Below, piece by piece: positions 2,644 to 64,000 of a stretch of DNA of 64,000 bases (within the stretch, counting starts at the first letter, position 1; each line of letters begins with the position of its first letter). The stretch lies in contig NC_043005.1 in assembly GCF_006345805.1 (NCBI RefSeq), forward strand, positions 16,430,001 to 16,494,000, in the 5' to 3' direction. The position numbers and the translations under genes are program-made. The notes under the pieces were generated by a model that worked only from the letters and a program-made list of their open reading frames with translations, did not search any database and was not told the DNA's origin. This stretch comes from Octopus sinensis (lineage: Eukaryota).

Positions 2644-2805
2644 CTCATTTTCGCTATGCTCCACTCCTGCCATAGCCTTGGCCACTTCATCCTCCAGGGC
2701 AGACATACTGCTGTCTGATATACCTTCGTGAATATCTCCTACTTGAGCTTCTAACTGTTGTATTTTGTCTTCGAGTGAATACACACTGCAGGCTGCCATG
2801 TAGAT
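2644..2805 (-). CDS. MYRIP-like: Coding exon similar to the MyRIP/melanophilin C-terminal coiled-coil region
   Basis: Acceptor ctttatcacag|ATC, donor GAG|GTGAGT, 162 nt, phase 0-0. IYMAACSVYSLEDKIQQLEAQVGDIHEGISDSSMSALEDEVAKAMAGVEHSENE aligns without gaps to vertebrate MyRIP as I recall it (approx. VYLAAGTVYGLE...IHSG...LEDQVATAAAQVHHAE; from memory, not looked up). Confidence 0.85.
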
Positions 2806-3122
2806 CTGTGATAAAGCAACATCAACTGATGAATTACACTTGCCAGGTTTATGAAAAACTTTAGGAATGTATTCATTTTCCCTGCTTGATCTTTAAACAG
2901 GTTTTTCGTAAAAAAAAATTAAAAAAACAGATTTCAGGCTTAGAGTAAAAAATTCCAGAATTTTATAATTTGGGATTTTTTTTTTTTAGCTGTTTTAAAA
3001 AGTTAGTATAATTATTAAAAAAAAATTTTGTTTTTGTTTTTAAGCAACAAATTTTACCAAAAGTCCTTTTCATGAACTGGAAATATTTTTTTAACTTTAA
3101 TATAAGCCCTAATACATATGGT

Positions 3123-3157
<35 letters not shown>

Positions 3158-3329
3158 TGGTGGTGGTGGAGGGTTTTCATAAAATACTAGATATCACTAA
3201 AATGAAAAATGAATCTATCTATATTACTTCTTTCCTAGATGTAATTAAACTTTCAGAGTCTGGCTAAGCAAAGACTATTGTTTCTATATGATTGGTTAAA
3301 AAAAAACTAATAATAATAATAATAATAAT

Positions 3330-3367
<38 letters not shown>

Positions 3368-4172
3368 AATAGAAAAGGAAAGAAAATAGATTATGAATGA
3401 ATCATATAATCTCAGTTTTTAATTTCTTTTGTTATTTCAATGAATAACCAGCTTGGATGTTGAGATGCGGATAGAAATTTCACTGACAAGAAGATTGGAT
3501 GAAGTCCTTTCTGTGTGTGTGGTAGCAACTTTGCACAAGATTGGCAGCAAGTTCAGTCAAGTAGGCATCAATATTCCAAAGAATAACAAATAACTTTCAA
3601 GTCAAATCCACATTAATCCTCCTTAATTTCCATTCAGGAAGTTTAAACACTGAGAGATTGATTTTCACAGTTAAATATCTAAGTGGGCCTACCCTTGTTT
3701 TGTTTTATGTTTTAATTATTTTTAATCCCTTTTATGAAACAAGACTCAATGAAATAATGTGTTTGTTGACCGCCTGTTCATAATGTCTTCATCATATTGA
3801 GGCAGAAAGTAGAGATTTGTTGGGGTTTTTTTTAAACAAAACTTTGCTTTTATCCTTTACTGTCAAGCTAAAGTTTAAGGAAGACCTCAATAGAATTTGC
3901 TAGGAATGTAGCATGACGAAATCCAAATATCCAGTTTTCAGAGGCATAACAACACTGTAAGAAACTCTAAAAGACATCCATCAAAATATATTACAGAACA
4001 CTGTAGAAAGCTGCAGTTATTTGGCTAAAATAAGAAAAATAAAACTTAGATAAAACAAAATTTATCAACAGCCTATGTTTTTCCCTGCTTAAATTGAATA
4101 ACATCAGCAAAATAGTTCTTTGCTTGCTAATGTGACATTTGACTATGTTGTGAAATGCTTTCCATATATACA

Positions 4173-4213
<41 letters not shown>

Positions 4214-4234
4214 GTCTGTCTGTCTCTCTGTCTG

Positions 4235-4265
<31 letters not shown>

Positions 4266-4940
4266 ATACAAGAATATCAAAATACTGATAATACTTTATG
4301 TTAGAGATAGGGATTCACTCAATTTAAACAACTCCAGAAATTCACTGGTGCCTAATTTATCACTGGACTCTAACTTACCAGCATGATGGGATGAAAGGCA
4401 ACCTTCACCTCAGTTGTTATTTGAACTCAAACCCAAAACAGCTAAATATTGCAAAGTGTCTTATTCTCTACTTTGCTGCTAATTCTCTCATCTACTGAAC
4501 TCGCTTTGATGATGATCATCATCATCATCATCATGATTATTATTATTATTATTATTTTTTTTTTTTCAACATATGCACAGTGCTATAAATATTTTGGTGG
4601 GAAGAGTATAAAAGCAAAGATCTTGTTTAAAAAGATTACAGCTGCTTTGTTAGCTTATTAGAGTGTTTTTAAATAACTTATATTATTTGATGTTGTTGCC
4701 AATACTGGTGATGCTACTGATGCTGTTTTTGTTGTTGTTGCTGACAGTAATCTTGATGCTAATGATGATGATGATGATGATGATGATGTATATGTAGTTC
4801 TATTTCAAGACAATTGTTTGTTTTGTTTGTTTAAATTCCATGAACACGACCATTCTCAATTCTCCAAGTGCAACAAGATGCATGAAACACGTGCATCAAA
4901 GCAGATGGATATAGCGTTCTTCCAGTGTTAATGTCTCAAC

Positions 4941-4981
<41 letters not shown>

Positions 4982-5331
4982 AGAGAGAGAAGGGGGGAAC
5001 GGAGAGAGAAGAGGGGAAGGGTGAGTTACCAAATGTACTTTGCCAGACTATTCCTTCTGGTTGAGAGAGTAAGCCTGGCTAGAACAATGAAAAAAAAAAA
5101 GCAACAACAAACAAAAAAAATGGAGAGAAAGCAAGGGAAAGACAAACAAGTCATGTGACTTGGAAAAATAAGGAGAGAAAGAAGGGGTAGGCGAGGATAG
5201 GGTTTAAGTTTTAGTTTTATGTTTCAAATAGCTCTCCACCCCTAGCAATTAAATAACAAACACACACCACCAAGAAAAAAAAAGTAAATAATAACAATAA
5301 TAATAATAACGATAATAATAATATAATAATA

Positions 5332-5382
<51 letters not shown>

Positions 5383-5407
5383 TGATAATAATAATAAAAA
5401 TAATAAA

Positions 5408-5443
<36 letters not shown>

Positions 5444-9585: not shown

Positions 9586-10140
9586 TTTGTCCTCTGTATC
9601 TTCAACTTCATGCTTTGTTTTCACAATGTCTCTGCTTCTAACCCCTGGTGTATTAGAGGATTTGTTAGGGTTCACTTTCTTTGGAGGGTTGACATAAAAG
9701 TCTTTCTTGAAGCGTTCAGCATCAACAGGTCTTAAACCAAAGTTATAACTAGTCACTTCTGAAGGTTTTGCTGAGCTAGAATCCTTTTGAGTACTGAACA
9801 AATCCCTAGAGCCCTCAACCGGAGATTCAGGAACCAATGTAGAGGGTTCTTTGTTTTCATGCTTCTGTTCAGTAACCACATCAGGTTCAGCTTCAACTTC
9901 GATATTCAGCTGATCTGTGGGCTCAAGTTTGTCTTTTGATTCTGTCACACTTGACAACTCATTTATTGGATAGCACACGGTTGGGTCATCCAGATCATCT
10001 GAATTCAAATGATCATTATAATCTGTCGTTGGAATTATATTGTTTTCAGTGTCCTTTTGTTGTTGAACAGCTAGCTCAGCCTTCTCCAAAATTTCAAGAG
10101 CAGTTGACGTTACCTTCCTCATCTTCTCTGCAGCCATTTT
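9586..10140 (-). CDS. Large coding exon, acidic/Ser-Thr-Pro-rich
   Basis: Acceptor cttttttcag|AAAATGG; 555-nt open frame KMAAEKMRKV...HEVEDTEDK, phase 0-0; donor AAA|GTAAGA. Confidence 0.85.
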
Positions 10141-17496: not shown

Positions 17497-17634
17497 CTGT
17501 TCATGATGTTCTGAAAGAACTCGGTGAGCGAACATGTCATCTACAGTTGTAGGTTCAATCCCTGCCTCATCTGCTGTTTCCGTGGGTACATCTTGCTTTT
17601 TCACAGATACATCTTTTGATTGGTCCGTAGTATC
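17497..17634 (-). CDS. Coding exon ending in VDDMFAHRVLSEHHEQ
   Basis: Acceptor gtatcacag|GAT; 138 nt, phase 0-0, DTTDQSKDVSVKKQDVPTETADEAGIEPTT...; donor CAG|GTGAGA; shares a 16-aa terminal motif with the 29.7-kb exon. Confidence 0.8.
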
Positions 17635-40915: not shown

Positions 40916-40985
40916 TAATAATAATAATAATAATAATATTGAAAAATACCTTAGGAGTGAGAACCCAGGTTCGAAATTTCCCGAA

Positions 40986-43554: not shown

Positions 43555-43600
<46 letters not shown>

Positions 43601-45200: not shown

Positions 45201-45202
45201 GA

Positions 45203-45379
45203 CATACATACATACATACATGCATGCATGCATGCAAGCATACATACATACATACATACATACATACATACATAAATACATACATACATACATACATATA
45301 TACATACATACATACATACATAAATACATACATACATACATACATACATACATACATACATACATACATCATATATACA

Positions 45380-45413
<34 letters not shown>

Positions 45414-45440
45414 CATACATACATATGTACATACATACAT
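45203..45440. repeat. (ACAT)n microsatellite
   Basis: Direct reading. Confidence 0.95.
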
Positions 45441-46512: not shown

Positions 46513-46553
<41 letters not shown>

Positions 46554-47333: not shown

Positions 47334-47380
<47 letters not shown>

Positions 47381-47686
47381 TAAAGATATATATTACAATA
47401 TACACACACACGCACACATACACACACACACACACAGAAGACATATATTACAATATTACTAACTTTATATATATATATATATGTGTGTGTGCGTGCGTGT
47501 GTGTGTGTGTATGCATGTGTTATAACACACTTTTTTCAATACCACACACATACACAACATACACACATATATAGTGTAAGAGAAAGAAAGACACACGGAC
47601 ATGTGTATGTGCGCACAAACACGCATTCATACTTACGCCCACAATTGCTGCACCATTAATATATACTTAGATATTTTTTATTGCAT

Positions 47687-47721
<35 letters not shown>

Positions 47722-49689
47722 TTCATACACACACATTACAAAATTTATTTCAATGTACATATGTAACACTTACAACATATGCTAAAATATTCTTAGTTTT
47801 ATCTACATACAACTAAGTTAATACCACCACAACATCATATCTTGCTTTTTAATGTATTTCCATTAGTTTTAATTTTATTCTAACAGAAAAACAGATTTTG
47901 CTTTTTAAATTTTGTCTAACATCTTAACTAAAGTAATCCATAACCTTTTTGTTACCAACCCAGGACCACCCATAATTCTGATATAAATTACCTCTTTTAA
48001 AATGATATAAATTATAACGTTCCTTCAATTTCCACATTGACTTGTGTTTCAAAAACTAGCTTGATAATGATAAAGTTATTTCAATCAAGTTTTCGTTATT
48101 TTCCAAACTTGAGAAGACAGGCCCACCACAACAGAATTGAGACCCTAAAACCAAGATGCCATATAAAAAACATTGTTGTGGGTGCTGGCGCCACTTAAAA
48201 AGCATTGGCGATGGTGCCACATAAAAAGCACCAAGTACACTCTGTGGAGTGATTGGCTTTAGAAAGGGCATCCGGCCATAGAAACCAAACCTAAACAGAT
48301 TATGAAACCTGGCATGGCCCCTGGCCTTACCAGTTCCTGTCAAGCCTTCCAACCCATGCCAGCATGGAAAACAGACATCAAATGTTGATGATGATGATGA
48401 TGGTGATGAAATGCAGATTTATGTTGACAAAAGGGATTAAACAGTTGTTCTTATTTGTTTGTCTTCGAATAATGATTTAAGGCAGGTGCATAGGACCACA
48501 ATGTTTGACAGGGAGTGGTGAGTGGTCAGAAGAGATGATTAAATGTCCTCAGGTAGTGGAATAGTACTTAATTTTATCATTCATGTTGGCACTCTGTCAC
48601 CACCATCTTTACATTCTTTCCATCTACCCTTCTGTAATGCAGCTCTTCTTTAGCAAGTCACTCATACTTAACCTCTCAACACCTGGTATGAAGCCATCTC
48701 CCTCCTCCTCTCTAAAATACATTCTCACCTGGTTGAGGGGAGGTGGGGGGATTTCTTTTCTTGTTTTACAAGTTACTTGGTGACCTCCTTAGTGCCAATG
48801 TCACAGAAAAAAGTACCCAGTGTACATAGTAAAGTGACTGCCATTAAGAAGGGTACCCAGCTGTAGAAACCATACCAATGCTGACACTGTAGCTTGATGT
48901 AGTCTTGTGACTGATCACATCCAGATGAACTGGTTAGATCCAGTTCTGTGACTGGTCAGATCCAGACAAACTATCCAACCCATGCCATTGTGCAGCACCT
49001 TCAACAGGTGTTTTCTGTTATAGTCCAGGGTCCACAAATACCCCTTAAGGAAAACACAACTGAAAATCATATTCTCTTTTACTCTTTTTTTACTTGTTTC
49101 AGCCATTTGACTGTGGCCATACTGGAGCACTGCTTTTAGTCAAGCAAATCAACCCCAGGACTTATTCTTTGTAAGCCTAGTACTTATTCTATCGGTCTCT
49201 TTTGCTGAACCACTAAGTTACGGGGACATAAACATACCAGCATTGGTTATCAAATGATGTTAGGGACACAAACAAACAAACACATACATATATATATGTA
49301 TGTGTATATATATATATACACATATATACGACGGGCTTCTTTCTGTCTACCAAATCCACGCACAAGGCTTTGGTTAGCCCGAGGCTATAGTAGAAGACAC
49401 TTGCCCAAGGTGCCACGCAGTGGGACTGAACCCGAAACCATGTGGTTGGTAAGCAAGCTATTTACCACACAGCCACTCCTATATAGAATTTTTACATAAT
49501 AAACTACACGTTAATAGTTGTGTGTGTGCTTTAATATTAGCAGGGGTGGGTAGTATAACAGCATACCTCTTTCCCAAAGTGAACTTCCTTTTCTTTCTAA
49601 AATGTCAAACTAGAACCATATGTTGTAAGTCTTAAATCTAATAGTTGCTTTTTATTATTATTATTTTTGCTTTTCTTTATATATTTGTG

Positions 49690-49905
49690 TTTGGTCATGT
49701 GATACGTATGGATGAGGACAGCTGTATAAAGAAGTGACGAGCTCTAATTGTGGAGGGTACCTGTGGAAAGGATAGACCCAGGAAGATGTGGGACGAAGTG
49801 GTGAGAAAGGATTTTCGGATGCTGGGCCTCACTGACGAAATGACAAGGGACCAGGAAATGTGGTGATTTGCAGCACTTGATAATACACATCAAGCCAAGT
49901 AATAT
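49690..49905 (+). mobile_element. RTE-clade LINE 3' fragment
   Basis: Same family as 19305-19500 (ggtcatgtg...gaggacagctgt...ggtagacccaggaagatgtggga). Confidence 0.7.
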
Positions 49906-50156
49906 CGCTGTCTTCCACATATACAAGGATTGTCCTTTCAGGTGCTGGTGCCAATTAAAAAGCACCTGTGCTGGTGCTGCATTAACACACCTGTGTCAGT
50001 ACTGCATAAACACACCCATAATGGTGACACGTAAAAAGCACCCAATACACTCTACTAAGGGTTTGGCATTAGGAAGGGCATCCAGCCATAGAAATCATGC
50101 CACAACAGACAACTGGAGTCCAGACAGCTCCCGGTCAGCCAGCTCCACATCAAACC

Positions 50157-50388
50157 TATTTCTTTATTATCCACAAGGGGCTAAACATAGAAGGGACAAA
50201 CAAGGACAGACATAGGTATTAAGTCGATTACATCGACCCCAGTGCGTAACTGGTACTTAATTTATCGACCCCGAAAGGATGAAAGGTAAAGTCGACCTCG
50301 GCAGAATTTGAACTCACAACGTAACGGCAGACAAAATACCGCTAAGCATTTCGCCCGACGTGCTAACGTTTCTACCAGCTCTCCGCCT
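50157..50388 (-). mobile_element. SINE family A inserted into a family C element, 15-bp TSD
   Basis: GCTCCACATCAAACC at 50142-50156 and 50389-50403. Confidence 0.9.
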
Positions 50389-50671
50389 GCTCCACATCAA
50401 ACCATACAACCTGTGCCAGCATGGAGAGCAGACATTAAACGATGCTGATGGTGATGCTTGCTTGAGATTTACCAGAATACAGAAATAGTGTGAGAGATAT
50501 CGACTGAGCAAAAAGTGATGATACACTGACAGCATGTCGTCGTTTTTGGAGGACCATGAGGATATCATAAAATTTTCATGCTAATCAAAGATAGTCTTAT
50601 ATGTTACCTATCCTACTACTATAACTACACATATACATGTGTGAATGTGTGCGTATGTATGTATGTATGTA

Positions 50672-50745
<74 letters not shown>

Positions 50746-50816
50746 TATATATATAATATATATATATATAATATATAATATATATATATATTATATATAT
50801 ATAATATAATATATAT

Positions 50817-50850
<34 letters not shown>

Positions 50851-51105
50851 ATATATATATATATATAATATATATATATATATAATATATTTGGTGAAAT
50901 AGAAAGGTGAATAATCTTGTTGCAGATTAATCAAAAGTTTAACCGATACCTTGGTAGCAAAAATCACAGCAGAAGAAAGCACGGTTGGAGGTACAACCAT
51001 ATGGTGTTGCAACCGTGCGTTAGTGCGGATAATTGAATTTTAATATTATTAGTGAATTGAAGAAATGGAGTTGAACGAAGATTGAACAGAAATCTTTTTA
51101 TTGCA

Positions 51106-51185
51106 TTCTACACGTGTTTTGAAAGCCACAATTTACCAAATTCCGATTGAATAAGGAGACCATATTGTGTCTTTCTCTTTAGGAA
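51106..51185 (-). ncRNA. Decayed type I hammerhead motif (two core G-to-A changes)
   Basis: Minus strand ttc CTAAAGA gaaag-a-cacaat...attgtg-g-ctttc AAAA cacgtg TA gaa; palindromic ACACGTGT. The flank is similar to the 38.3-kb element (aaNtggagttgaacga). Confidence 0.55.
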
Positions 51186-51290
51186 GAAATAGGAATTCCG
51201 TTGGCAGAACAAAAACAGAACAGAGGCGCAGCAAAACAAATCGAACGAGGAGGCTCCTAAGAGCCCATATCTATATATATATATATATAT

Positions 51291-51358
<68 letters not shown>

Positions 51359-51443
51359 TATATATAATATATATATTATATATATAATTATATATATATA
51401 TATATTAATATATATATATATATATATTATATAATATATATAT

Positions 51444-51506
<63 letters not shown>

Positions 51507-51743
51507 ATAACAAAGGGTAAAATTAATTAATAAGAAGTAATCGATAATTTCACCAAGTAGAATTCGGCATGAAAAAGGACCATTTCACGGTAAAGCAAAT
51601 CTTTACTGAACCCTAATTATAAAGTATATATATTTATATTTATATATATATATATATATATATATCATATTATAATCAAGGATTTTATCAGGTAGCTAGC
51701 ATGTAAAACCTTTTAGGTAAAAATTAATACAGGGCATATAATT

Positions 51744-51870
51744 TTTTATAACAATTATAAGGGAAAACTATATGGTACTTCCACATGCTGGCACGTGGCA
51801 TGATCATGTAGATTTCACTTATTTTAATTGTTATACCATGTAGTTTACCCTTACTATAATTGTTATAAAA
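51744..51870. repeat. Small foldback/MITE, ~35-bp imperfect arms
   Basis: ttttataacaattata...tatggta / taccatg...tataattgttataaaa. Confidence 0.7.
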
Positions 51871-51875
51871 TATAT

Positions 51876-51926
<51 letters not shown>

Positions 51927-53065
51927 GGCGTAGAAGTGGCTGTGTGGTAAGTAGCTTGCTTACCAACCACATGGTTCCAGGTTCAGTCCCACTGCGTGGA
52001 ACCTTGGGCAAGTGTCTTGTACTATAGCCTCAGGCCAACCAAAGCCTTGTGAGTGGATTTGGTAGATAGAAACTGAAAGAAGCCTATTGTATATATGTAT
52101 ATGTATATGTATATATATGTGTGTGTGTATACATTTGTGTGTCTGTGTTTGTCCTCCCAACGTCGCTTGACAACCAATGCTGGTGTGTTTACGTCCCTGT
52201 AACTTAGCAGTTCAGCAAAAGAGACTGATAGAATAAGTACTAGGCTTACAAAGAATGAGTCCTGGAGTCGATTTGCTCAACTAAGTTACGGGGATGTAAA
52301 CACACCAGCATTGGTTGTCAAGCAATGTTGGGGGGACAAACACAGACATACAAACATATACACATAAGATGAGCTTCTTTCAGTTTCTGTCTACCAAATC
52401 CACTCACAAGGCTTTAGTTGGCCTGAGGCTATAGTAGAAGACACTTGCCCAACGTGCCCCGCAGTGGGATTGAACTTGGAACCATGTGGTTCGCTAGCAA
52501 GCTAACTTACCACACAGCCACTCCTACGCCTATTCAAGATAGAAATTTTAAAAGGGAACACCATTACAATAAAAAAAAGAACATAAAATCTAAACATCTA
52601 TAATAACAAATGCTACAAACATCGTGAGACAAAGAATAGGATTGTATACATTGAAGAGATAGGTTTTTAATATCATTATTATTATTATTATTATCATTAT
52701 ATTATGTAAATTGATGCCAGATGGTATTTAATAGGCAAAGGTGGTGATGGTGGTGACAATGGATGGGGGAGGAGATGATGCAGAATTGAAGCAGCATGTT
52801 GCTGCTTGGGTAAAAAGAAATCAAATTTGTTACACTTCTGCATGGAAAGAATTGTCTCCGTAGCAGACACCCCGAAAAAGAGAGGAAAACCAAGAAAGAA
52901 AAGAAAGTCTCTTGTCTGCTATTGTTTATGATAATGTCCTGGTTTTTCTCTAGGTAGAGGTGAGGTAGGGAGGTGTATATGTGTGGGTGTATGTGTGTGT
53001 GTGTGTGTCAGAAATTGAACTAAATTACAAACATGGAAAAAATTTCAAAATTAAGCAAGATGTGT

Positions 53066-53099
<34 letters not shown>

Positions 53100-53933
53100 T
53101 TATAGTATCCATGTGTATATGTGTGTATGTATACAGTAAAGAAATCATTGATATTTTTATTATTAATTTATTCTTGTTGCTGTTATTAGTGGGTGGTAAG
53201 TTGGCATAAAAAACAATGTCAGAGTTTATTATACAGAGAATTTGATTATTGTTGTTACTGTTGTTGTTGTTGTTGTTGTTGTAAAGACAGTGAGCTGGTA
53301 GAGCCATTAGTACACTAGGCAAAATGGCTTTTGTCCATCTTCATTACCTGAGTTCAAATTCCATCAAGGTGAACTTTGCCTTTCATCCTTCCAAGCTCCA
53401 TAAAATAAGTGCCAGTTGAACATCATGGTCAATGTAATTGACTTCCCCCTCCCCTCAAAAACTGCAAGCTCTATGCCAAAATTTGACACCATTATTATTG
53501 AGAGAGCAGAGCATGCCATCAGAGTGACACTAGGGTAAAATATACGAAGCCCAATATACCCATCATGACTACCTATCTGATAAGGGTACACCATGTACAT
53601 GCATATTATTATCAATATTATTTTTATTATTATTATTATTATTCATCATCATCATCATTTAGCATTCGCTTTCCATGCTAGCATGGATTGAACGGTTCAA
53701 CTGGGGTCTGTGAAGCCAGAAGGCTGCATCAGGCCCAGTCTGATCTGGCAGTGTTTCTACGGCTGGATGCCCTTCCTAACGCCAACCACTCCGTGAGTGT
53801 AGTGGGTGCTTTTTACGTGCCACCCGCACAGGTGCCAGACGGAGCTGGCAAACGGCCACGAACGGATGGTGCTTTTACATGCCACCGGCACGGGGTCCAG
53901 GTGAGGCTGGCAATGGCCACAAACGGATGGTGC

Positions 53934-53973
<40 letters not shown>

Positions 53974-54923
53974 GAGTGAGAGAGTAATGCATGCCATCAA
54001 AGTGACACTGGGGTAAAATAATACAAAGCCCAGTATACCCATCATGACTACCTGTCTGATAAGGGTACAACAACAAGCACATGCATCACAACCATATGTG
54101 CATGACAGTGATATCATACCAAGATAAACAGCACATGACCTTACAGGTGGGGCCCAATTAGAATTTTCTTCAGGTCAAGTAGCCCATCCCGCTCAAAAGG
54201 TCCCTGAATAAGGATTGTTTAAGGATGTTGAACGAAGCATTCATGTTTCCGAAGGTGAATTATCCAAACCCCAAAGAATTCCTCTCAAAATATGGCTATG
54301 ATTATTATTATTATTACTATTATTATTATTATATTATTATTATTATTATTATTATTATTAAGTGAGAGAGTAATGCATGCCATCAGAGTGACACTGGGGT
54401 AAAATATACAAAGCCCAATATACACATCATGACTCCCCGTCTGATAAGGGTACTAGGCACTATTGTTGTTGTTAAATGTGGTCAATTGGCAGAATCACTA
54501 AAGTATAAGACAAATCATTTTACAGTGCTTGTCCAGGCTCTTTACAATCCAAGTTCAAGTCCCACTGAGGCTAACCCCTAAGTTAATAAAATGAAGTACC
54601 ATGAAGTACTTGGTTCAATGTAATCAAATAATCCTTAGAAGTTGCTAAACTATTACCTTAATAAAAAACAATCATTAGCATTATTGGTTGAAAATTTTGC
54701 AGAAATTATGACAATGTGTCCGAGGATATAATTTCATCCCTCCATGTTCTTAGTTCAAATCCAGTCAAGACCATGTTTGACTTCCACCCTTCTAGCATCC
54801 GATGAATAACAACCAGTCAAACACAGAGTCTGAACCCAGAACATAAATTCTGATGAAATGCTGCTAAAAATTTTGTCGGGAATGGTGATGATGATGATGA
54901 TAATAATAATAATAATAATAATA

Positions 54924-54957
<34 letters not shown>

Positions 54958-55002
54958 GAACTATTACTACCCATGTAAGAACTATTACTACCCATGTAAA
55001 AT

Positions 55003-55179
55003 AGAACTATTACTACCCATGTATTTTAATTTAACTTAAAAAAAAAAAATTTTTAAATGAATGAACTAGTGAGTTTAGTTTAATGGCCTACCAATGTATA
55101 CTATGAGTTTCTTTGCCCTAGGAGTCGGGAAGACACTTGGCAAGAAATGGAAGCAAATTTGAAAGAAGAAAAAAAAAAG

Positions 55180-55180
<1 letters not shown>
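55003..55180 (+). mobile_element. (AAT)n-embedded short retroelement 3' piece
   Basis: Near-identical to 8155-8330 (tactacccatgtattttaat...ggaagcaaatttgaaagaagaa). Confidence 0.7.
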
Positions 55181-55219
<39 letters not shown>

Positions 55220-55256
55220 CAACAACAACTCATAATAATAACTAATAATAAAAATT

Positions 55257-55680
55257 ATATCTTGTGGGATTTTATGAGATAGAGAATAGGAAGCCAGACA
55301 TAGTTTTAATTGAGAAAGAAAGCAAACTATGCTGGATCATAGATATAGCATTCCCAGCTGACAACAGGGTATGCGATAAGGATGAAAGAAAAGTCGATAG
55401 ATATGACAGGTTAGCTTGGGAGATTAAGCAGTTGTGGTCAATGTAAAAGGTGGTAGTAGTACCAATAATTGTTGGAGCCCTGGGAACAGTGAGTTAAATC
55501 TTGAGAAGTACATGGAACAAATAGGGGCTGCAATAAGGGTGGAGCACTTGCAGAAAACAACACTGCTTGGAACCGCTGGAATATTCCAGAAGGTGCTCGA
55601 AAAATAAGAGGTGTTACCTTAGTTCACTGGTAGCGAAGAGCTGACACCATAGAAGCTGTGCAAAGAAAATAATAATAATA
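55257..55680 (+). mobile_element. RLE-type (R4/Dong-like) non-LTR retrotransposon 3' end in (TAA)n
   Basis: NRKPDIVLIEK...IIDIAFP...KVDRYDRLAWEIKQLW then, with stops, VVPIIVGALGTV...LQKTTLLGTA: PD-D-K restriction-like endonuclease tail; flanked by AAT repeats. Confidence 0.85.
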
Positions 55681-56008
55681 ATAACAATACATTTTATTAT
55701 AGGCAGAAGGCCTGAAATTTTGGGGGAGTCGATTACATTGACCTCAGTGCTTCACTGGTACTCAAATTATTGACTTTGAAAAGATGAAAGTCAACCTCAG
55801 CAGAATTTGAACTCAGAACATGAAAACAGACAATATGCTGCTAAGCATTTCACCTGGAATGCTAACGATTCTGCCAGCTCACCACCTTAATAATAATAGC
55901 AATGGTTTCAAATTTTGCCACAAGGGCAGCAATTTCGGAGTGGGGGGATGAGTTGATTACATCGATCCCAGTGTCAAACTGGTACTTATTTTATCAACCC
56001 ATAAAATA

Positions 56009-56520
56009 CCGTAAATCCTCAAGTATAATCCACATTTTTTCCCCAAAATTTAAAGGTCAAAATCCCTTGTGCATACTATATACGAGGTTAAAAATAAAAA
56101 ATATTTTCTAAGCAATGTCCAAGCCTCTATTTGATATCCAGCAATATTTATTCAGACGCAGTTTGTGATGTCAGGCGCGAAAATACCTTAAGCTAAGCCT
56201 GAAAGCAATGAAGTCATAAAAGAATCATCCATAACTTGCAGTAAGCAACATTTATTAAACGTTATTACTGTTACTTCTTTATTTTCTGCAAACAAAATGC
56301 ACAAAAAAGCTACACGTTTGCATTATGTTATATATACAATAATAATAAAGGACGTTACCGTATACATTTTTACAAACCAAGGACGTTATATAGACCTCCT
56401 TGACTCAAGTTAGAGAAGGGGTGCGTATTATATACAAGGTTTAGGTTTTTCAGAGTTACAGCCCCGTAAAAATCCCCTGTGAATTATACTCAAGGGCAGA
56501 CTATACTCAAGGATTTATGG
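56009..56520. mobile_element. Tc1/pogo-type MITE
   Basis: TA TSDs; TIR CCGTAAATCCTCAAGTATA / TATACTCAAGGATTTATGG. Confidence 0.8.
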
Positions 56521-59500
56521 TATTTCAAACATATAAATGTTTGAAATAATTGAAATCACGTAAACATTCCGGAGCGGGGCCGGAGTGACCGTTTCACCCT
56601 CATTGTAAAATTTTCATTTTATTCATTTTTCATGTGCTAATTGTTCTTGCATGTGTGTTTGTCCCCTTTATGTCGGCCTCTTGTGGGCAATAAAAAATCA
56701 GCTTATTTCATCAACCCATAAAAGGATGAAAGGTAAAGTCAACCTTGATGGTGTTTGACCTCAGAATGTGAAGACAGACGATATGCTGTTAGGCATTTCA
56801 CCTGGCATGCTAACGACTCTGCCAGCTTGCCACATTCATAATAATAATAATAATCTTTTCTACTCTAGACACAAGGCCTGAAATTTTTGGAGGAGGGGGC
56901 CAGTTGATTAAATCAACCCTCAGTACACAACTGGTACTTGATTTATCAACCCCAAAAGGATGAAAGACAAAGGAAAGCAGATATTGTTCTCTCAGTTAAA
57001 AGTTTTCCCTTGTTACTTTTTTACAAGAGTTTCCATAGTTGTTTTTCCTAATGAGGAGAAATATCTTTGTCAAGAAAAAAAGCACCCATGGCACACTGTA
57101 AAGTGGCTGACATTAGGATGGGCATCCATCTATAAGAACCTTGGCAAAGCAAACTCTGGAAACCAATGCAGCCCAGAGGCACTAGTTTGTGGTCCTGTCA
57201 AACTGTCTAACCTACGTCAGCATGGAATACGGGTATTAAATGATGATGATTGTTACACACTCATAGACTTATAGGGGGTTAGCATCAACTGCAATGTGCA
57301 GTCAAATAATTAAGGAACTAACTAAAATGTCATTGACGCTCGCAAAATAATGTTCTGTAAATAAACACGAGCCTCTAATTCCCTCAGATGTTTCAGATTC
57401 TGGTTCAAAGATATGGTCATATGTTTCTCCTTTAGCTTATTATTTTCTTTTGAAGATATTATGTAAAATATAAAGCTGAAAGTTTCTTAATCACTGAAAT
57501 GTGAATGAAAATTGCAAAGCGACAAAGTTGTGTTGCATTCCATATGGTGGTTATTGTCACAATGTCCATGGTGCTACCATGCTACATCTAGTAATCTGGT
57601 AGAAATAAGCGTTACTTAAAACTAAAACATAACAATTTTTAAGACACTTCAATCTGACTTAATTTTTGTTCTCAAGTGTATATTATTAGATTTGAAAACA
57701 AATTATTGCCAGAATATATGGAGATAGGAGTGGCTGTGTGGTAAGTAGCTTGTTTACCAACCACATAGTTCCGGGTTCAGTCCCACTGCATGGCCACAGT
57801 CAAATGACTGAAACAAGTAAAAGAGATATTGTAAGAAGAGAATTATTATGAAGACAATGAGTTTCAGTTAAAATTTTTTTAATGGGATTAGTCTCACTCT
57901 GCGGCATCTTGTGCAAGTGTCTTTTACTATAACCCTGGACTGGCCAATGCCATGTGAGCGAATTTGGTAAACGGAAACTGTATGGGAGCCTATCAAGTGT
58001 GTGTGTGTATTTGTGTGTTTGTGTTTGTGTGTGTGTGTGTATTTGTGTGTTTATGTGTGTGTGTGTGTGTGTGTGTGCATGTGTCTATGTTTGTTGCCCA
58101 TCATTTGACAACCAGTGTTGGTTTGTTTACATCCCCATAACTTAGCAGTCTGGCAAAATAGACTGATAAAATAAGCACCAGACATGATAAAAAACAAATA
58201 CTGGTGTTGATTTCTTTGAATACACTATTCAAGACGGTACCCCAGCAAGGCCACAGTTCAATGATTGAATCAAGATAAAAACTATGACCTCCCATTATAA
58301 AATCTTAAAGTTTATCAGACGTAAGTGTAAAAGCCAAAAAGAAAGAGTGAACATTATACAAATAACAAGCTGACCATTGATAGAAAGAAGCAGGGAGAGG
58401 AGAGGATGAACGAATCTGAATAATTGGTGAATTAAAAGACTAATTCATCATCATCATCATCGTTTAACGTCCGCTTTCCATGCTAGCATGGGTTGGACGA
58501 TTTTGACTGAGGGCTAGCGAGCCAGATGGCTGCACCAGGTTCCAATCTTGATCTGGCCGAGTTTCTACAGCTGGATGCCCTTCCTAAAGCCAACCACTCC
58601 GAGAGTATAGTGGGTGCTTTTTACATGCCACCAGCATGGGTGCCAGTCAGGTGGCACTGGCAACAACCTCGCTCGAATCTTATTACACGTGCCAGTGAAG
58701 CGACGTTGGTAACGATCACATTCGAATGGTGCCCTCTTACATGCCACAGGTACGGAAGCCAGTTGACTGCTCTGGCAACAATCATGATCAGATGGTGCTC
58801 TTAGCACCCTACTACTACTACTAATTAGTTAAGAGAAATGCAGAATGTGAGAAGAAAGGGTAGATTTCTAAGATGGAAAAAGGGGTGGGTGACCCCCTTT
58901 GGTCCTGAATGACTATGGGATTGCACTTCGAAAGCTACCCTCCGAGGCACAAGTCCAGGCAAGGTTGTTTATGGAAGGACAGCAGTCGCTCATGCATACC
59001 AGCTTCCTCTCACCACGCCACCAATGTTATCCAAGGGGAAAGCAAAGGCCATTACAGCTTGGCACCTGTGACGTTGCAACTCATTTCTACAGCTGAGTGA
59101 ACAGGAACAATGAGAAATAAAGTGTCTTGCTCAAGAACACAACATGCAGCCCAGTCAAGGAATCGAACTCACAACCTCATGATCGTAAGCTCGATGCTCT
59201 AACCACTGAGCCATGCACCTTCACTTCTAAAATGTAAAAGTAAGTAATAAATAGGTAGATACTGCTAAAATGTTGCTTTGTTGCATGCCATCAGTCGGTT
59301 ATTTTTGTCACCACCCCAGTGTCACCTTCTACCCAGTACACAATATGATACAACTAGTAGTGTGTGTGCAATGCTATCTCTGGACAACTTTCCACAACAC
59401 TTCATATACCAGGGACCAGGAAAATTAGTTTCACAGTCTAATCCATGATTATATTACTGAGCAGGGCTGATATTTATGAGAAACTTGCCGCCTTTAGTGA

Positions 59501-59862
59501 GTGTGCAATACTTAGCTACCACACTAAGGATATATATACAATTTTACAACACTGATACACAACAATGACATCAGAGGTCAACAGTCACTCTTTTAATTTG
59601 GGTTTAATCTGGTTTATCAAACCTTTGGCTCCCATGCAGGTGGCATGTAAAAAGCACCCATTACACTCTCAGAGTGGTTGGAGCAAAGAAGGGCATCCAG
59701 CTGTAGAAACTTTGCCAGATCAGACTGGTGCCTGGTACAGCATCCCGGCTGGCCAGTTCTTAGTCGAACTGTCCAACCCGTGGCAGCATGGAAAGTGGAC
59801 GTAAAACGATGATGATGATGCAGCTGTAAGAAGCTTCGAAATCGATTACATTTATATATATA

Positions 59863-60094
59863 CTAGTATTATAACCCGATTTCATTCGGGTCTACTCGGG
59901 CCACATTTTAAAGATGAGGTATTTTACCCTAGAGGCCACGCCTTTCAATTGAGCAAACTCAAAGTTGCCATGCAAACTCCCTAGCACTTTTAACATAGGG
60001 GTGCAAATTTTCAAGTCAATCTGACAATATTTTCGAACACTTTTGCCTGCGCAACTGCTTCTGAGACGTCCACCCTTTTCACAAATATATAGTA
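59863..60094 (-). mobile_element. Second short Helitron family, directly adjacent
   Basis: a|CTAGtattataACCCGAtttcatTCGGGT hairpin; the other end runs into the 60096 element. Confidence 0.65.
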
Positions 60095-60095
60095 A

Positions 60096-60487
60096 CTAGC
60101 AGTATCGCCTGGCGTTGCTCGGGTTTGTAAGGGAAATAACTATATAAGCATTTTTAGAGATGTAAAGTATAATAGCCATCTCAATATGGCTAACCACAAA
60201 GGGGGGGGGGTGTTACTGTAGCTTTTTACGTTCTGAGATTTAATAATAAACTTTTAAAGAGTTACTTCCCTTATATATGCCAAAAATGCATTAAAAATGG
60301 GGAAAATTGATGGTAATTTTTTTTTTAAATCGTAGACTCATCATAGACGTGCGCTAATACCCAGAAGGGCTCGATATGAATCACGACTATAAGATACCCG
60401 GTTTTGGTTAAACTGCACCGCAAAATGTGGGAGTAGTTAGGAATCTAAATCGTAGGAGACAGACACACAACTTCATTTTATATAGAA

Positions 60488-60490
<3 letters not shown>
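60096..60490 (-). mobile_element. Non-autonomous Helitron
   Basis: On the minus strand: 5' TC, subterminal GC hairpin (ccaggcgttgctcggg region), 3' CTAG, inserted between A and T. Homologous to 62978-63378. Confidence 0.8.
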
Positions 60491-60539
<49 letters not shown>

Positions 60540-61267
60540 GATGTATGTATATAATATATATATGATGCATATATATATATATATATATATAGTAATATGT
60601 GTGTGTGTGTGTGTTGTGTGTGTGTGTGGTGTGTGGTGTGTATGTGTGTGTGTGTATATATATATATATCAAGTTTGATAACTGCCATTCGACTAACCGG
60701 TGTTACTGAAGAGTTACTTCCCTTATACAAACCAAACTGTCTTATGGTTGATACAGAAAGGAGCCTTTAACCGTTCAGTTTTTAGTTCATCGAACTACTA
60801 AAACTGGTCGATTTTAGATGATATCATTTTATGTAAACATATATGCCTGACACGCCCACACATAACAGCATTCACATATATATAAACAGCACACATATTT
60901 ATGCATACAAACAAGATACATATATACACATAAAAATCTCATATCACATACACAAACATGTATACTTGCAATGATACTGACATGTACACACACAGCAAAC
61001 CAACGACAGAGTACTTCTACATAGTTGCTGGACCTTCCAGAAATAGCAACCAAATTTCCATCAAATAACACTTAAAAAATAGAAATACTCAAACGAATAA
61101 GAAACCCTAGAGACATTGTCTGAATAAAAGTCGTGATGGTCATGGCTGGAAGGTCTTTCATCAAAAACCTGATCAGTGAGAAATGACCAAGTGCTAATCA
61201 ACAACAACAACAACAACAACAACAACAGGAAAGATATCAACACAGTCATGTAGCCATGTCGACTTAC

Positions 61268-61494
61268 CTCATCTGCTGACTGAAGCATGTCTTCTGCTAC
61301 ATGTGAGACATTATCTTTGGTCCGAGTCATTTTCCGACTGAGGTTTTCAATGTGTTTCTCCTCTCTCACACAGGGTTCCTCAGATGCCTTCTGCCCAACA
61401 CTGCCATTGTGAGCATCCGGCTGAACCTTGGTGACATCGGATGCTTTTGGTGATGATGTCATCTTTGTAACTTCCTTTCTTTCACTTTCCTCCA
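61268..61494 (-). CDS. Coding exon, charged low-complexity region
   Basis: T-rich tract then ttcttaag| acceptor; open frame (V)EESERKEVTK...NVSHVAEDMLQSADE; donor GAG|GTAAGT; 227 nt, phase 1 to 0. Confidence 0.75.
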
Positions 61495-62078
61495 CTTAAG
61501 AATTGGTATAAGAATTAATAAAAAAAAATATAAAATGATTATTAAGTTAATTGCATAGAACTTTAATGAGAAACTAATGTCAGATCAATAAAATAAATTT
61601 TGAGTGAATGTGTGTGAATGACTTGCATACATACTGCAAAAGTAGGTGCATGTTTATGTATGTATGTATGTATGTATGTATGTATGTATGTATGTATGTA
61701 TGTATGTATGCATGCATCTATCTATCTATCTATATATATATATATATATATAGTGCTGTGTATAACATTAAACTGCATAAGGTAGCGAAGCTCCAGTGTA
61801 GGAGCCCTGGAGTTGTAGGGAGTATGGAGTCACCCCTTAATTATCATTACTTTTAAGTTTACTCTGACCAAGAAGAGCAGTACCTGTCAGGATCCCATCT
61901 AAGGGTTAAATAGATTTCCCAGGGGTAGAGGAAGCTCTCATTATGCTTGGCATGTATATATAATATATATATACATGCCAAGAATAATGGGGATCGATTT
62001 GCTCGACTAAAGGCAGTGCTCCAGCATGGCTGCAGTCAAACGACTGAAACAAGTGAAAGAGAGTGAAAGTGAAAGAGA

Positions 62079-62107
<29 letters not shown>

Positions 62108-62112
<5 letters not shown>

Positions 62113-62333
62113 TGTTGTGTCTAGGGAGAGTCATTCTGTTTTGGTGCCTTATAATTTAACACACTCACCGGAAAAAATTTCCACTTATTTCTTATTTTTA
62201 TTTTCCTAAAATTTTTGTTGCGTCTTGCAACCTTTTCAATAGAAAAATAAGGAATAAGTGGAAATTTTACCGGTGAGTGTGTTAAATTATAAGGCACAAA
62301 AAGAAAATGACTCTCCTCAGACACAACAGAATA
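62108..62333. repeat. Foldback: ~95-bp inverted repeat in (TA)n
   Basis: tattctgttgtgtct...ccacttatt vs aataagtgg...agacacaacagaata. Confidence 0.85.
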
Positions 62334-62409
62334 TGCTTCAACACACGAACTCACATAAAGAATCTTGCAAACCAAATCCAAAATAGAAATATATATATAT
62401 ATATATAAT

Positions 62410-62825
62410 ATATATATATATATATAATAATAATAATTGTGTACAGTGCTCAGGTGCACTACAACTCATCTAAAGTGTATATATAATCAGGTGTAGTTTC
62501 GACGCATTTCGGGAAGCATGAGGGCCTTAAAGGATGCAGTGTCATGGCAGTCAACAACTGATGCAGGCAGTTTATTCCACGCTTCAGCAACCCTGAGCGT
62601 GAAAAAATGTTTCCGAAAGTCATGGGAGCTGTGCTGTTTTCTGACTTTGTAGGCATGTCCACGTGTGTTAGACACATGGAGATCAAAAAGGTGTTCAGTG
62701 TTGTTGTTGGTGAGGTGGTTGATAACCTTGTGGGTGTTTACCAAGTCCGTCGCCAGACGCCGGAGCTTCAGTGAATCCATGCCCAGGGAAACAAGGCGCT
62801 CAGAATATGGTAGGTGTCTGATGGA
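62410..62825 (-). mobile_element. CR1/L2-clade LINE 3' fragment
   Basis: ORF 62487-62780 SLKLRRLATDL...TRGHAYKV...RKHFFTLRVAEAWNKLPASVV. Confidence 0.85.
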
Positions 62826-62977
62826 GGGTATGCGAGAGAGAGAGAGAAATATATATATATAAAGGGGTTTGTATGATTGTGTATAGAGGGATATATATTA
62901 TTCAAAGAAATTTCAACTCTGTCTGTTTTTTATGTTTTATTTATATTCTTTATAATATTAATGTAGAATATAGAATA

Positions 62978-63378
62978 CTAGCAGTATCGCCCGGCGTTGC
63001 TCGGGTTTGTAAGGGAAATAACTATATAAGCCTTTTTAGAGAGGTAAAGTATAATAGCCATCTCAATATGGCTAACCACAAAGGGGTGGGGTGTTACTGT
63101 AGCTTTTTACGTTCTGAGATTTAATAATACATTTTAGAGAGTTACTTCCCGTATATAATAGCCAAAAAATGCATTAAAAATGGGAAACAAATGATTGTAA
63201 ATTTTTTTTAAAGTCGTAGATTCATCATAGACACGCACTAATACCCAGAAGGGCTTGATATGAATCACGACTATAAGATACCCGGTTTTGGTTAAACTGC
63301 ACCGCAAAATGTGGGAGTAGTTAGGAATCTAAATCGTAGGAGACAGACAGCACACAACCTCTCTTTTATATATAAAGA
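62978..63378 (-). mobile_element. Non-autonomous Helitron (same family)
   Basis: a|CTAGcagtatcgCCCGgcgttgctCGGGtttg...tataaaGA|t. Confidence 0.85.
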
Positions 63379-63554
63379 TATAGTACAAATAATATAAATA
63401 GTGTAAAATGAAATAAAGTATTGATTGTCTTATTGAATAGATTGAAATGTTGAATATTTTACACTATATATATTATTTATACTATATATTCTATATTCTA
63501 CTTTAATATAATAAAAGAATATAAATAAAATATAAAAAACAGAGTTGGAATTTC

Positions 63555-63595
<41 letters not shown>

Positions 63596-63773
63596 TATAT
63601 ATAATTAATAAGGTAGTCAGAATGTTGGATGATTATATATATATTTTTATTTACATTTTATTTACATTTTTAGGACTTTCTTCCATTTTACATATATATA
63701 CATATATATATATACACACACACACGTATATATACATATATATATACACACACACATATATATATACATATAT

Positions 63774-63851
<78 letters not shown>

Positions 63852-63870
63852 TCAGAATTCATTAACTAAC

Positions 63871-64000
63871 CTTTGCTAACACTTTCCACTGGTTCAACAA
63901 TAAGCTGGGCACAGTGCCTTACTTCTCCAACAAGGTTTCGTCCAACAACACAGTATTCCGCATCATCATCGAGAGTTGCATTGTCTATTGACAAACTGTA
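63871..64000 (-). CDS. Coding exon (5' end beyond window): C-terminal half of an Ig I-set domain
   Basis: Minus-strand frame reads [43 protein letters not shown], matching the I-set E/F/G-strand pattern (L-x-I-x-N, D-x-A-x-Y, N-x-x-G-E, A-x-L-x-V). Donor AAAG|GTTAGT at 63871/63870, phase 1, which fits the next exon. Confidence 0.85.

What the first reader, a model, noticed from the sequence alone, without database searches (positions are those of the whole stretch)
2644..64000. Ig I-set domain joined to a MyRIP/melanophilin-type tail: unexpected architecture
Seen: six exons splice in compatible phases (1-1, then 0-0), from an Ig domain to a MyRIP-like coiled coil. The junction TEDK|IYMAA parallels the recalled LENK-VYLAA of MyRIP. 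Established: vertebrate MyRIP and melanophilin are Rab27 effectors that link organelles or pigment granules to myosin and actin, and have no Ig domain. Inference: this is an invertebrate Rab-effector-like protein with an added intracellular Ig module (no Cys at the canonical Y+2 position, as in some cytoskeletal Ig domains). It is of interest for granule transport in cephalopod pigment or secretory cells. The 31-kb gap means two separate genes are possible.
Basis: partly seen in the sequence, partly recalled or inferred. Interest (0 to 1): 0.7.

Follow-up and report, generated by a model that had tools for sequence, protein, structure and literature searches.

The report
Octopus MyRIP gene with Ig domains
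The window holds the middle third of one large octopus gene, a relative of the vertebrate granule-to-myosin linker MyRIP, that carries two titin-like Ig domains; this layout is shared by molluscs, annelids, brachiopods and chelicerates but is absent from the one amphioxus and four vertebrate MyRIP sequences seen here.

Summary
Six minus-strand exons with canonical splice sites (A 64000-63871, B 61494-61268, C 29833-29657, D 17634-17497, E 10140-9586, F 2805-2644) join in frame. Exon A is the C-terminal half of an I-set Ig domain. Exon F matches Pfam Rab_eff_C above its curated cut-off and aligns to mammalian MyRIP 669-744 (hhalign 97.7%).

The 31-kb gap is an intron, not a gene boundary:
- All five O. 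bimaculoides RefSeq isoforms splice B to C.
- A 1257-aa gene model, 415/417 identical to the window exons, joins A to B.
- A related cephalopod mRNA, assembled independently three times, carries Ig1, Ig2 and the MyRIP tail in one open reading frame.
- Orthologues in gastropods, bivalves, a chiton, Lingula, Owenia, a horseshoe crab and a sea spider show FYVE_2, two I-set domains and the MyRIP coiled coil, or part of that set where the model is truncated.

Amphioxus and vertebrate MyRIP lack the Ig pair. The O. bimaculoides split into two genes coincides with assembly gaps.

Databases call these proteins "titin homolog" or "uncharacterized", and I found no paper describing them. Function is inferred, not tested.

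The parts
63871..64000 (-). Exon A: C-terminal half of the second I-set Ig domain ([43 protein letters not shown]). It is cut by the window edge and ends in phase 1 at donor G|GTTAGT. Read-through would add Gly and then stop (TAG 63867-63865).
   Evidence: I-set profile positions 56-90/90; P0006 residues 695-737; 13 orthologues hit it; Ig2 pLDDT >90.
61495..63870 (-). Intron A-B (2.4 kb, phase 1), mostly TA/CA microsatellite plus an RT-like ORF remnant.
61268..61494 (-). Exon B: disordered linker, then the start of a conserved helix (ENLSRKMTRTKDNVSHVAEDMLQSADE). It contains the Met used as the start in the O. bimaculoides RefSeq models. It enters in phase 1 and leaves in phase 0.
   Evidence: motif conserved directly after Ig2 in orthologues; helix, pLDDT 66-78.
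29834..61267 (-). Intron B-C (31.4 kb, phase 0), the '31-kb gap'. It holds interspersed repeats and no further conserved exon.
   Evidence: The B|C splice is used in P0001-P0006.
29657..29833 (-). Exon C: continues the conserved helix (MTLIQHHLDFMDRTLNKLE), followed by a linker and the motif VNDVFAQKVLAEYHIQ.
17497..17634 (-). Exon D: phase 0-0 cassette exon ending in VDDMFAHRVLSEHHEQ, which duplicates the motif at the end of exon C. It is included in O. bimaculoides X1, X2, X4 and X5 and in the cephalopod mRNA. It is skipped in X3 and in the 1257-aa model.
9586..10140 (-). Exon E: conserved helix (AAEKMRKVTSTALEILEKAE), about 130 aa of disordered acidic sequence, a conserved NFGLRPVDAERFKKDFYVN motif, and the lead-in to the coiled coil (...VEDTEDK).
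2644..2805 (-). Exon F: MyRIP/melanophilin-type coiled coil (IYMAACSVYSLEDKIQQLEAQV...LEDEVAKAMAGVEHSENE), with donor GAG|GTGAGT. The gene continues downstream beyond position 1.
   Evidence: Rab_eff_C 37 bits, E 1.7e-9; hhalign to mammalian MyRIP 669-744.

Best explanation
The window covers residues about 695-1111 of a roughly 1260-aa octopus protein that is the protostome counterpart of vertebrate MyRIP (Slac2-c). The gene spans about 245 kb. The window holds six of its exons, separated by introns of 2-31 kb.

Shown: the protein family has an N-terminal FYVE_2/Slp-homology Rab-binding domain 53% identical to mammalian MyRIP. This domain lies upstream of the window. It is followed by a conserved acidic middle region, two tandem titin-like I-set Ig domains, a set of conserved long helices, and the MyRIP/melanophilin coiled coil and tail. 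Ig2 is bounded and split by phase-1 introns, whereas the other exons in the window are phase 0. This is the usual signature of a shuffled Ig module.

Inferred: the protein is cytosolic, since no member shows a signal peptide by eye and the N-terminal FYVE_2 domain is intracellular. By analogy with MyRIP and melanophilin, it docks on GTP-bound Rab27/Rab3/Rab8-type GTPases on secretory or pigment granules through FYVE_2. It then couples the granules to actomyosin through the coiled coil and tail. The Ig pair would be an extra cytoskeleton-binding or spacer module, of the kind seen in titin, palladin and myosin light-chain kinase.

Mollusc and cephalopod models also begin at a conserved alternative first exon that omits FYVE_2. 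This suggests a Rab-independent isoform.
For: - Exon structure and phases.
- Pfam: Rab_eff_C on exon F and I-set on exon A. P0006 (1257 aa) has two I-set domains (123 bits) plus Rab_eff_C.
- P0006 is 415/417 identical to the window model and colinear with exons A, B, C, E and F. Its gene range is 245 kb in GCA_951406725.2.
- O. bimaculoides isoforms X1-X5 join B-C-(D)-E-F.
- The gene model immediately upstream there has FYVE_2 plus two I-set hits. It contains only the first half of Ig2 (L001 3248-3418), followed by an assembly gap.
- mRNA evidence: P0030 (Ig1, Ig2, Rab_eff_C) is one uninterrupted 4155-nt ORF on three independently assembled contigs, with in-frame stops upstream. It is 49% identical and colinear across all five junctions.
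- Orthologues with FYVE_2 plus two I-set domains (plus Rab_eff_C where it is detectable): Lingula, Haliotis, Patella, Owenia, Solemya, oysters, scallop, chiton and Tachypleus. The Pycnogonum fragment has two I-set domains plus Rab_eff_C at 58 bits.
- Exon B/C sequence is conserved directly after Ig2 in these proteins.
- hhalign to mammalian MyRIP: FYVE_2 E 4e-41 at 53% identity; coiled coil E 2.5e-12.
- AlphaFold model: both Ig domains at pLDDT >90 and four long helices at pLDDT 66-85. The closest structures are titin tandem Ig domains.
Against: - No transcript from this species was examined; P0006 is a computed gene model.
- RefSeq for O. bimaculoides annotates two genes and starts the tail gene at a Met inside exon B. 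An internal promoter giving a tail-only product therefore cannot be excluded.
- P0006 itself lacks FYVE_2.
- The Rab_eff_C match covers only about 80 of 717 profile positions (544-624). The vertebrate myosin-binding and most of the actin-binding sequence is not recognisably conserved.
- Nothing here tests Rab, myosin or actin binding, or expression in any cell type.
Confidence: 0.82

Rival explanations
1. There are two adjacent genes. An upstream FYVE_2-Ig-Ig gene ends at or just after exon A. A separate 'MyRIP tail' gene starts in exon B, as annotated for O. bimaculoides.
For: RefSeq models P0001-P0005 all start at the Met in exon B, and a separate 805-aa FYVE_2 plus I-set model lies upstream. 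Read-through of the exon A donor stops after one codon, so a short isoform is mechanically possible.
Against: The O. bimaculoides locus has N-gaps exactly where exon A should lie, and exon A is absent from the assembly there. The 805-aa model therefore ends in half an Ig domain. Exon B is open and conserved upstream of that Met (VEESERKEVTK vs VEGSERKEVPK). P0006 joins A to B. A cephalopod mRNA and orthologues in several phyla carry both parts in one chain.
Confidence: 0.06
2. The gene is a small titin/obscurin-type muscle protein, as several database names suggest ('titin', 'titin homolog'), and the MyRIP resemblance is generic coiled-coil similarity.
For: NCBI names for the Lingula, Argopecten, Liolophura and C. 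virginica members. The best PDB and Foldseek matches of the Ig pair are titin. The next-best non-family hits are unc-89, MYLK, OBSL1 and palladin.
Against: There are only two Ig domains and no Fn3 or kinase domain. The family's FYVE_2 is 53% identical to mammalian MyRIP. The coiled coil aligns motif for motif (EExIYMxAGKVYSLED...LEDxVAxxxAQV) from mammals to molluscs. After family members, the profile's best hits are MyRIP and an Ig-less amphioxus homologue.
Confidence: 0.04
3. The full-length models are fusion artefacts of gene predictors that merged neighbouring genes in many genomes.
For: Most family members seen here are computed models from genome annotation.
Against: P0030 and P0031 are uninterrupted ORFs on 4.9-5.9 kb contigs assembled from sequencing runs. 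P0030 was recovered from three separate runs. The order and spacing of the conserved blocks is the same in every phylum.
Confidence: 0.03

Closest known systems
Vertebrate MyRIP / Slac2-c (Rab27 effector binding myosin VIIa/Va and actin)
   Same: N-terminal FYVE_2/SHD is 53% identical. There are no C2 domains. The coiled coil aligns to MyRIP 669-744 (E 2.5e-12). A helix resembling exon E's AAEKMRKVTSTALEIL precedes the coil. The order is the same: Rab-binding domain, long partly disordered middle, coiled coil, tail.
   Different: The octopus family has two I-set Ig domains between the middle region and the helices, and mammalian MyRIP has none. Only about 80 of 717 Rab_eff_C positions are recognisable. 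Proteins are 1250-1750 aa against about 860 aa.
Melanophilin / Slac2-a
   Same: It belongs to the same Pfam families (FYVE_2, Rab_eff_C). The conserved coiled coil is of the kind reported as essential for myosin Va recruitment by melanophilin (Hume et al. 2006, title as cited in PMC11231147, ref. 123).
   Different: Melanophilin is shorter, vertebrate-specific as far as is known, and has no Ig domains. Its myosin Va-binding motifs were not identified here.
Amphioxus FYVE_2 protein P0094 (Branchiostoma, 1151 aa)
   Same: It has FYVE_2, the post-Ig helix motif (NLSEKVSAKQEEVLESAQDILHSA), the TSTVL helix and the coiled coil in the same order.
   Different: It has no Ig domain by Pfam, so the Ig pair is not universal in invertebrates.
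Cytoskeletal tandem I-set Ig modules (titin Z1Z2 and I-band, palladin/myopalladin, MYLK/telokin, obscurin/unc-89)
   Same: These are the closest sequence and structure relatives of the Ig pair. They are intracellular, and in Ig2 the canonical F-strand Cys is replaced.
   Different: Those proteins lack FYVE_2 and Rab_eff_C and are sarcomere or actin-bundle components. No binding partner of the Ig pair here is known.

Membership tests
MyRIP/melanophilin (Slac2) Rab effectors | N-terminal Slp-homology / FYVE_2 Rab-binding domain | tested here: met
   Not inside the window. It is present in the O. bimaculoides model that holds the first half of the same Ig2 and in orthologues at 96-119 bits. It is 53% identical to mammalian MyRIP, E 4e-41. 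The 1257-aa octopus model uses an alternative first exon without it.
MyRIP/melanophilin (Slac2) Rab effectors | C-terminal Rab_eff_C region (PF04698) | tested here: met
   Exon F scores 37 bits against a cut-off of 23. P0006 scores 39 bits and Pycnogonum 58 bits. hhalign to MyRIP 669-744 gives 97.7%. Only profile positions about 544-624 of 717 are covered.
MyRIP/melanophilin (Slac2) Rab effectors | No C2 domains (distinguishes Slac2 from Slp and rabphilin) | tested here: met
   No C2 hit in any of 12 family members scanned.
MyRIP/melanophilin (Slac2) Rab effectors | GTP-dependent binding to Rab27 | not testable with these tools
   Needs a pull-down or two-hybrid assay. Only domain homology is shown.
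MyRIP/melanophilin (Slac2) Rab effectors | Binding of myosin Va/VIIa and of F-actin | not testable with these tools
   The vertebrate myosin-binding sequence is not recognisably conserved. The coiled coil and a C-terminal ARAAFWE motif are conserved within the invertebrate family.
Immunoglobulin I-set domain (PF07679) | Full-length match to the I-set profile and a beta-sandwich fold | tested here: met
   Exon A alone covers profile positions 56-90/90. The whole Ig2 in P0006 (639-729) covers 1-90/90, and two domains score 123 bits. The AlphaFold model has pLDDT >90 with 8-9 strands per domain. Foldseek to titin Z1Z2 gives E 6e-21.
Immunoglobulin I-set domain (PF07679) | Canonical B-strand / F-strand cysteine pair | tested here: not met
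   Ig1 has both (LNCRV...YMCIA). Ig2 has the B-strand Cys (FRCKV), but Val occupies the F-strand position, with Cys one residue earlier in octopus and Thr in orthologues. This pair is not obligatory for the family and is often absent in intracellular Ig domains.
Titin / obscurin-type giant muscle proteins (database names of several members) | Long arrays of Ig and Fn3 domains, often with a kinase domain | tested here: not met
   Exactly two Ig domains and no Fn3 or kinase domain.

The most novel reading that the evidence does not exclude
The tandem Ig pair is an ancient, possibly ancestral bilaterian part of MyRIP-type Rab effectors. It would serve as their actin- or myosin-docking module, with the chordate lineage having lost it and relying on unstructured binding motifs instead. 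The invertebrate genes now labelled 'titin homolog' or 'uncharacterized' would then be the missing MyRIP/melanophilin orthologues. The conserved FYVE_2-less isoform would be a Rab-independent cytoskeletal adaptor.
Probability: 0.25. Interest if true: 0.6.

Novelty: new variant of a known kind. Interest (0 to 1): 0.45.

Why it matters
MyRIP and melanophilin are the textbook adaptors that link Rab27-marked granules to myosin and actin. Their history outside vertebrates is called hard to resolve because conservation is so low (bioRxiv 10.1101/591974).

This locus and its relatives give a recognisable protostome counterpart, with firm anchors at both ends: FYVE_2 at 53% identity and a motif-for-motif coiled coil. 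They also show that this counterpart carries a titin-like Ig pair.

That has three uses:
- It corrects misleading database names ("titin homolog").
- It explains a split gene model in O. bimaculoides.
- It offers a testable idea about how invertebrate granule adaptors engage the cytoskeleton.

It is a domain-architecture finding, not a new mechanism. The proteins are already in public databases as unstudied predictions.

Tried and rejected
- Pfam on exons B, C, D and E alone, and on B to the start of E joined, gave nothing significant.
- Exact look-ups of O. bimaculoides isoforms X5 and X2 found no locus; X1 did.
- Exon A has no counterpart in the O. bimaculoides locus by tblastn or blastn, because the region is broken by N-gaps. 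That annotation therefore cannot decide the A-B junction.
- The P0006 locus was too long (245 kb) for its DNA to be returned.
- Literature searches for MyRIP with Ig, invertebrate or mollusc terms found no description of this architecture. PMC1635380 is not held. The insect synapse paper lists MYRIP in a table but gave no usable statement.
- The two word-indexed homologue surveys scored only the 8000 candidates sharing most words, so the taxon list is a sample, not a census. Whether the Ig pair was gained in protostomes or lost in chordates could not be settled, because no cnidarian, echinoderm or hemichordate member was retrieved.
- The RT-like ORFs (14892-15395 +, 62490-62897 -) and the SINE-like ORF gave no Pfam hit.
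- I considered chance coiled-coil similarity. I rejected it on the Pfam score, the hhalign result and the motif conservation.


Full report
**What is in the sequence**

The window is AT-rich (33-40% GC), repeat-laden animal DNA. On the minus strand, six open segments have canonical AG acceptors and GT donors:

| Exon | Coordinates | Phase |
|---|---|---|
| A | 64000-63871 | runs off the window edge; ends in phase 1 |
| B | 61494-61268 | phase 1 in, phase 0 out |
| C | 29833-29657 | 0-0 |
| D | 17634-17497 | 0-0 |
| E | 10140-9586 | 0-0 |
| F | 2805-2644 | 0-0 |

Spliced together they give 463 codons without a stop.

**Domain tests on the exons**

Exon F matches Pfam Rab_eff_C (MyRIP/melanophilin C-terminus) at 37 bits, E 1.7e-9, above the curated 23-bit cut-off. 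Exon A matches positions 56-90 of the 90-position I-set profile. Exons B-E match no Pfam family.

Exon A reads AEYCVVGRN.

**Is it one gene?**

A word-indexed search with the six-exon model found O. bimaculoides "rab effector MyRIP" isoforms at 94% identity. All five isoforms (555-655 aa) start at the Met inside exon B. They splice B-C-(D)-E-F, and X3 skips D. The 31-kb gap is therefore an intron.

At that locus the neighbouring upstream model (805 aa, same strand) has FYVE_2 plus two I-set hits. The O. bimaculoides DNA is broken by many N-gaps, and exon A is not present in it. The first half of Ig2 is there (L001 3248-3418) and is followed at once by a gap. The upstream model thus ends inside an Ig domain, so the two-gene annotation is best explained as an assembly artefact.

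An exhaustive HMMER search with exons E+F found a 1257-aa protein, P0006. It is 415/417 identical to the window model. It reads ...[11 protein letters not shown]|VEESERKEVTKMTSS... across the A|B junction and continues B-C-E-F. It comes from a 245-kb gene in assembly GCA_951406725.2. From memory that assembly is Octopus vulgaris; I did not check this with a tool.

Pfam finds two I-set domains (123 bits) and Rab_eff_C in P0006. The window encodes its residues 695-1111.

**Transcript-level evidence**

P0030 is 1384 aa with Ig1, Ig2 and Rab_eff_C. It is a single uninterrupted 4155-nt ORF on three contigs of 4.9-5.6 kb, assembled independently from three sequencing runs. There are in-frame stops upstream of its ATG.

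Given intron sizes of 2-31 kb in this gene, these contigs must be spliced mRNA. P0030 is 49% identical to the window model and colinear across all five exon junctions, including exon D. It therefore comes from a related cephalopod.

**Conservation**

| Taxon | Architecture found |
|---|---|
| Lingula anatina (named "titin"), Haliotis asinina, Owenia fusiformis | FYVE_2 + two I-set + Rab_eff_C |
| Solemya, Patella, Saccostrea, Ostrea, three Crassostrea species, Argopecten and Liolophura ("titin homolog"), Tachypleus tridentatus | FYVE_2 + two I-set |
| Pycnogonum litorale (partial protein) | two I-set + Rab_eff_C (58 bits) |

The alignment shows that the second half of exon B and the start of exon C (NLSRKMTRTKDNVSHVAEDMLQSADE|MTLIQHHLDFMDRTLNKLE) form one conserved block directly after Ig2 in these proteins. 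The B|C splice therefore falls inside a conserved segment.

tblastn of 17 family proteins against the window hits only exons A-F.

**Relation to MyRIP**

The family's FYVE_2 is 53% identical to mammalian MyRIP (hhalign E 4e-41). The coiled coil aligns to MyRIP 669-744 (97.7%, E 2.5e-12). The motif EExIYMxAGKVYSLEDRI...LEDxVAxxxAQV runs from mammals through amphioxus to chelicerates and molluscs.

After family members, the profile's best hits are vertebrate MyRIP and an amphioxus protein. The amphioxus protein has FYVE_2, the post-Ig helix motif and the coil, but no Ig domain. Mammalian MyRIP has FYVE_2 and Rab_eff_C only.

The Ig pair is therefore shared by lophotrochozoans and chelicerates and absent from the chordates sampled. 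Gain versus loss is unresolved.

**Structure**

An AlphaFold model of P0006 535-1132 was built with 12 family sequences. Its segments are as follows (pLDDT figures are 10-residue block means):

| P0006 residues | Exons | Prediction | pLDDT |
|---|---|---|---|
| about 535-729 | upstream exons and A | two Ig domains | >90 |
| 736-780 | start of B | disordered linker | <50 |
| 781-833 | B/C | long helix | 66-78 |
| 859-905 | end of C / start of E | long helix | 77-85 |
| 907-1008 | middle of E | disordered | <50 |
| 1041-1080 and 1088-1129 | end of E, F and the next exon | two helices | 74-84 |

The Ig pair is closest to titin tandem Ig domains by sequence (3b43, E 5e-57) and by fold (titin Z1Z2, E 6e-21). 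The nearest non-family sequences are unc-89/obscurin, MYLK, OBSL1 and palladin/myopalladin. All of these are intracellular cytoskeletal Ig proteins.

**Gene structure signal**

Ig2 is entered, split and left by phase-1 introns (L001 3248-3418; exon A donor). All other junctions in the window are phase 0. Phase 1-1 symmetry is the classical mark of a shuffled Ig module. That reading is an inference.

**Mechanism**

The architecture, its conservation, and the homology of both ends to MyRIP are shown.

The following is inferred from the established roles of MyRIP and melanophilin, from my own knowledge and as summarised in 10.1101/591974. FYVE_2 docks on GTP-bound Rab27-type GTPases on granules. 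The coiled coil and tail engage myosin and actin. The Ig pair adds a cytoskeletal contact or a rigid spacer.

No binding or expression data were available.

**Novelty**

The proteins exist in public databases as unstudied predictions, several of them misnamed. I found no paper describing Ig-bearing MyRIP relatives. One preprint states that MYRIP conservation outside vertebrates is too low to resolve its evolution.

I rate this a new variant of a known kind, of moderate interest.

Noticed in passing
window 17497-17634 vs 29657-29833 (minus strand): Exon D is a phase 0-0 cassette exon. It is skipped in P0006 and in O. bimaculoides X3, and included in X1, X2, X4, X5 and in the cephalopod mRNA. 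Its last 16 codons (VDDMFAHRVLSEHHEQ) repeat the end of exon C (VNDVFAQKVLAEYHIQ). This suggests an old partial exon duplication.
   Followed up: partly
window 63865-63871 (minus strand): Reading through the exon A donor adds one Gly and then a TAG stop. Intron retention or intronic polyadenylation would therefore give a short product ending right after Ig2. Whether such an isoform exists is unknown.
   Followed up: no
outside the window: P0006, P0014 (Mytilus), P0030 / L002 421-: There is a conserved alternative N-terminus, MIR[SG]RK..N..[ST]WF[IL]GFD, that replaces the FYVE_2 Rab-binding domain. It occurs in octopus, a second cephalopod (on an mRNA with upstream in-frame stops) and a mussel. 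This suggests an old Rab-independent isoform.
   Followed up: partly
L001 (O. bimaculoides CM046610.1) 3624-3987, 6586-6690, 7882-8107, 8671-9637: Assembly gaps lie between the first half of Ig2 (L001 3248-3418) and exon B (about 9968). The counterpart of exon A is missing from the assembly, which probably caused RefSeq to split one gene into two models.
   Followed up: yes
L001 3248-3418 and window 63871: All three introns that touch Ig2 are phase 1, while the five other exon boundaries in the window are phase 0. This is the pattern expected for an Ig module acquired by exon shuffling.
   Followed up: partly
window 36600-37050, with copies at about 1450-1730, 11050-11700, 21680-21940, 27300-27620, 35800-35990, 40650-40770, 46550-46650, 48210-48390, 53650-53940, 58450-58670, 59630-59820: A SINE-like interspersed repeat of about 300 bp occurs at about a dozen loci in both orientations, at 71-90% identity, sometimes with internal tandem sub-repeats. 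It accounts for many of the spurious ORFs with the 'LDALPNANHS..VVGAFYVPPA' translation.
   Followed up: partly
window 14892-15395 (+) and 62490-62897 (-): Two ORF remnants look by eye like the C-terminal tail of a LINE-type reverse transcriptase (...SLEKRQRRGGLI... / ...LKLRRLATDLV...). Neither has a Pfam hit, and the first has no second copy in the window.
   Followed up: partly
window 33860-34650 and 63560-63860: There are long imperfect CA/TA-rich micro- and minisatellite tracts inside introns. They give long low-complexity ORFs in several frames.
   Followed up: no
database records for P0010, P0087, P0088, P0089: Family members in Lingula, Argopecten, Liolophura and Crassostrea virginica are named 'titin' or 'titin homolog', although they have only two Ig domains plus a MyRIP-type FYVE_2 domain. 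The name is likely an automatic misannotation.
   Followed up: yes
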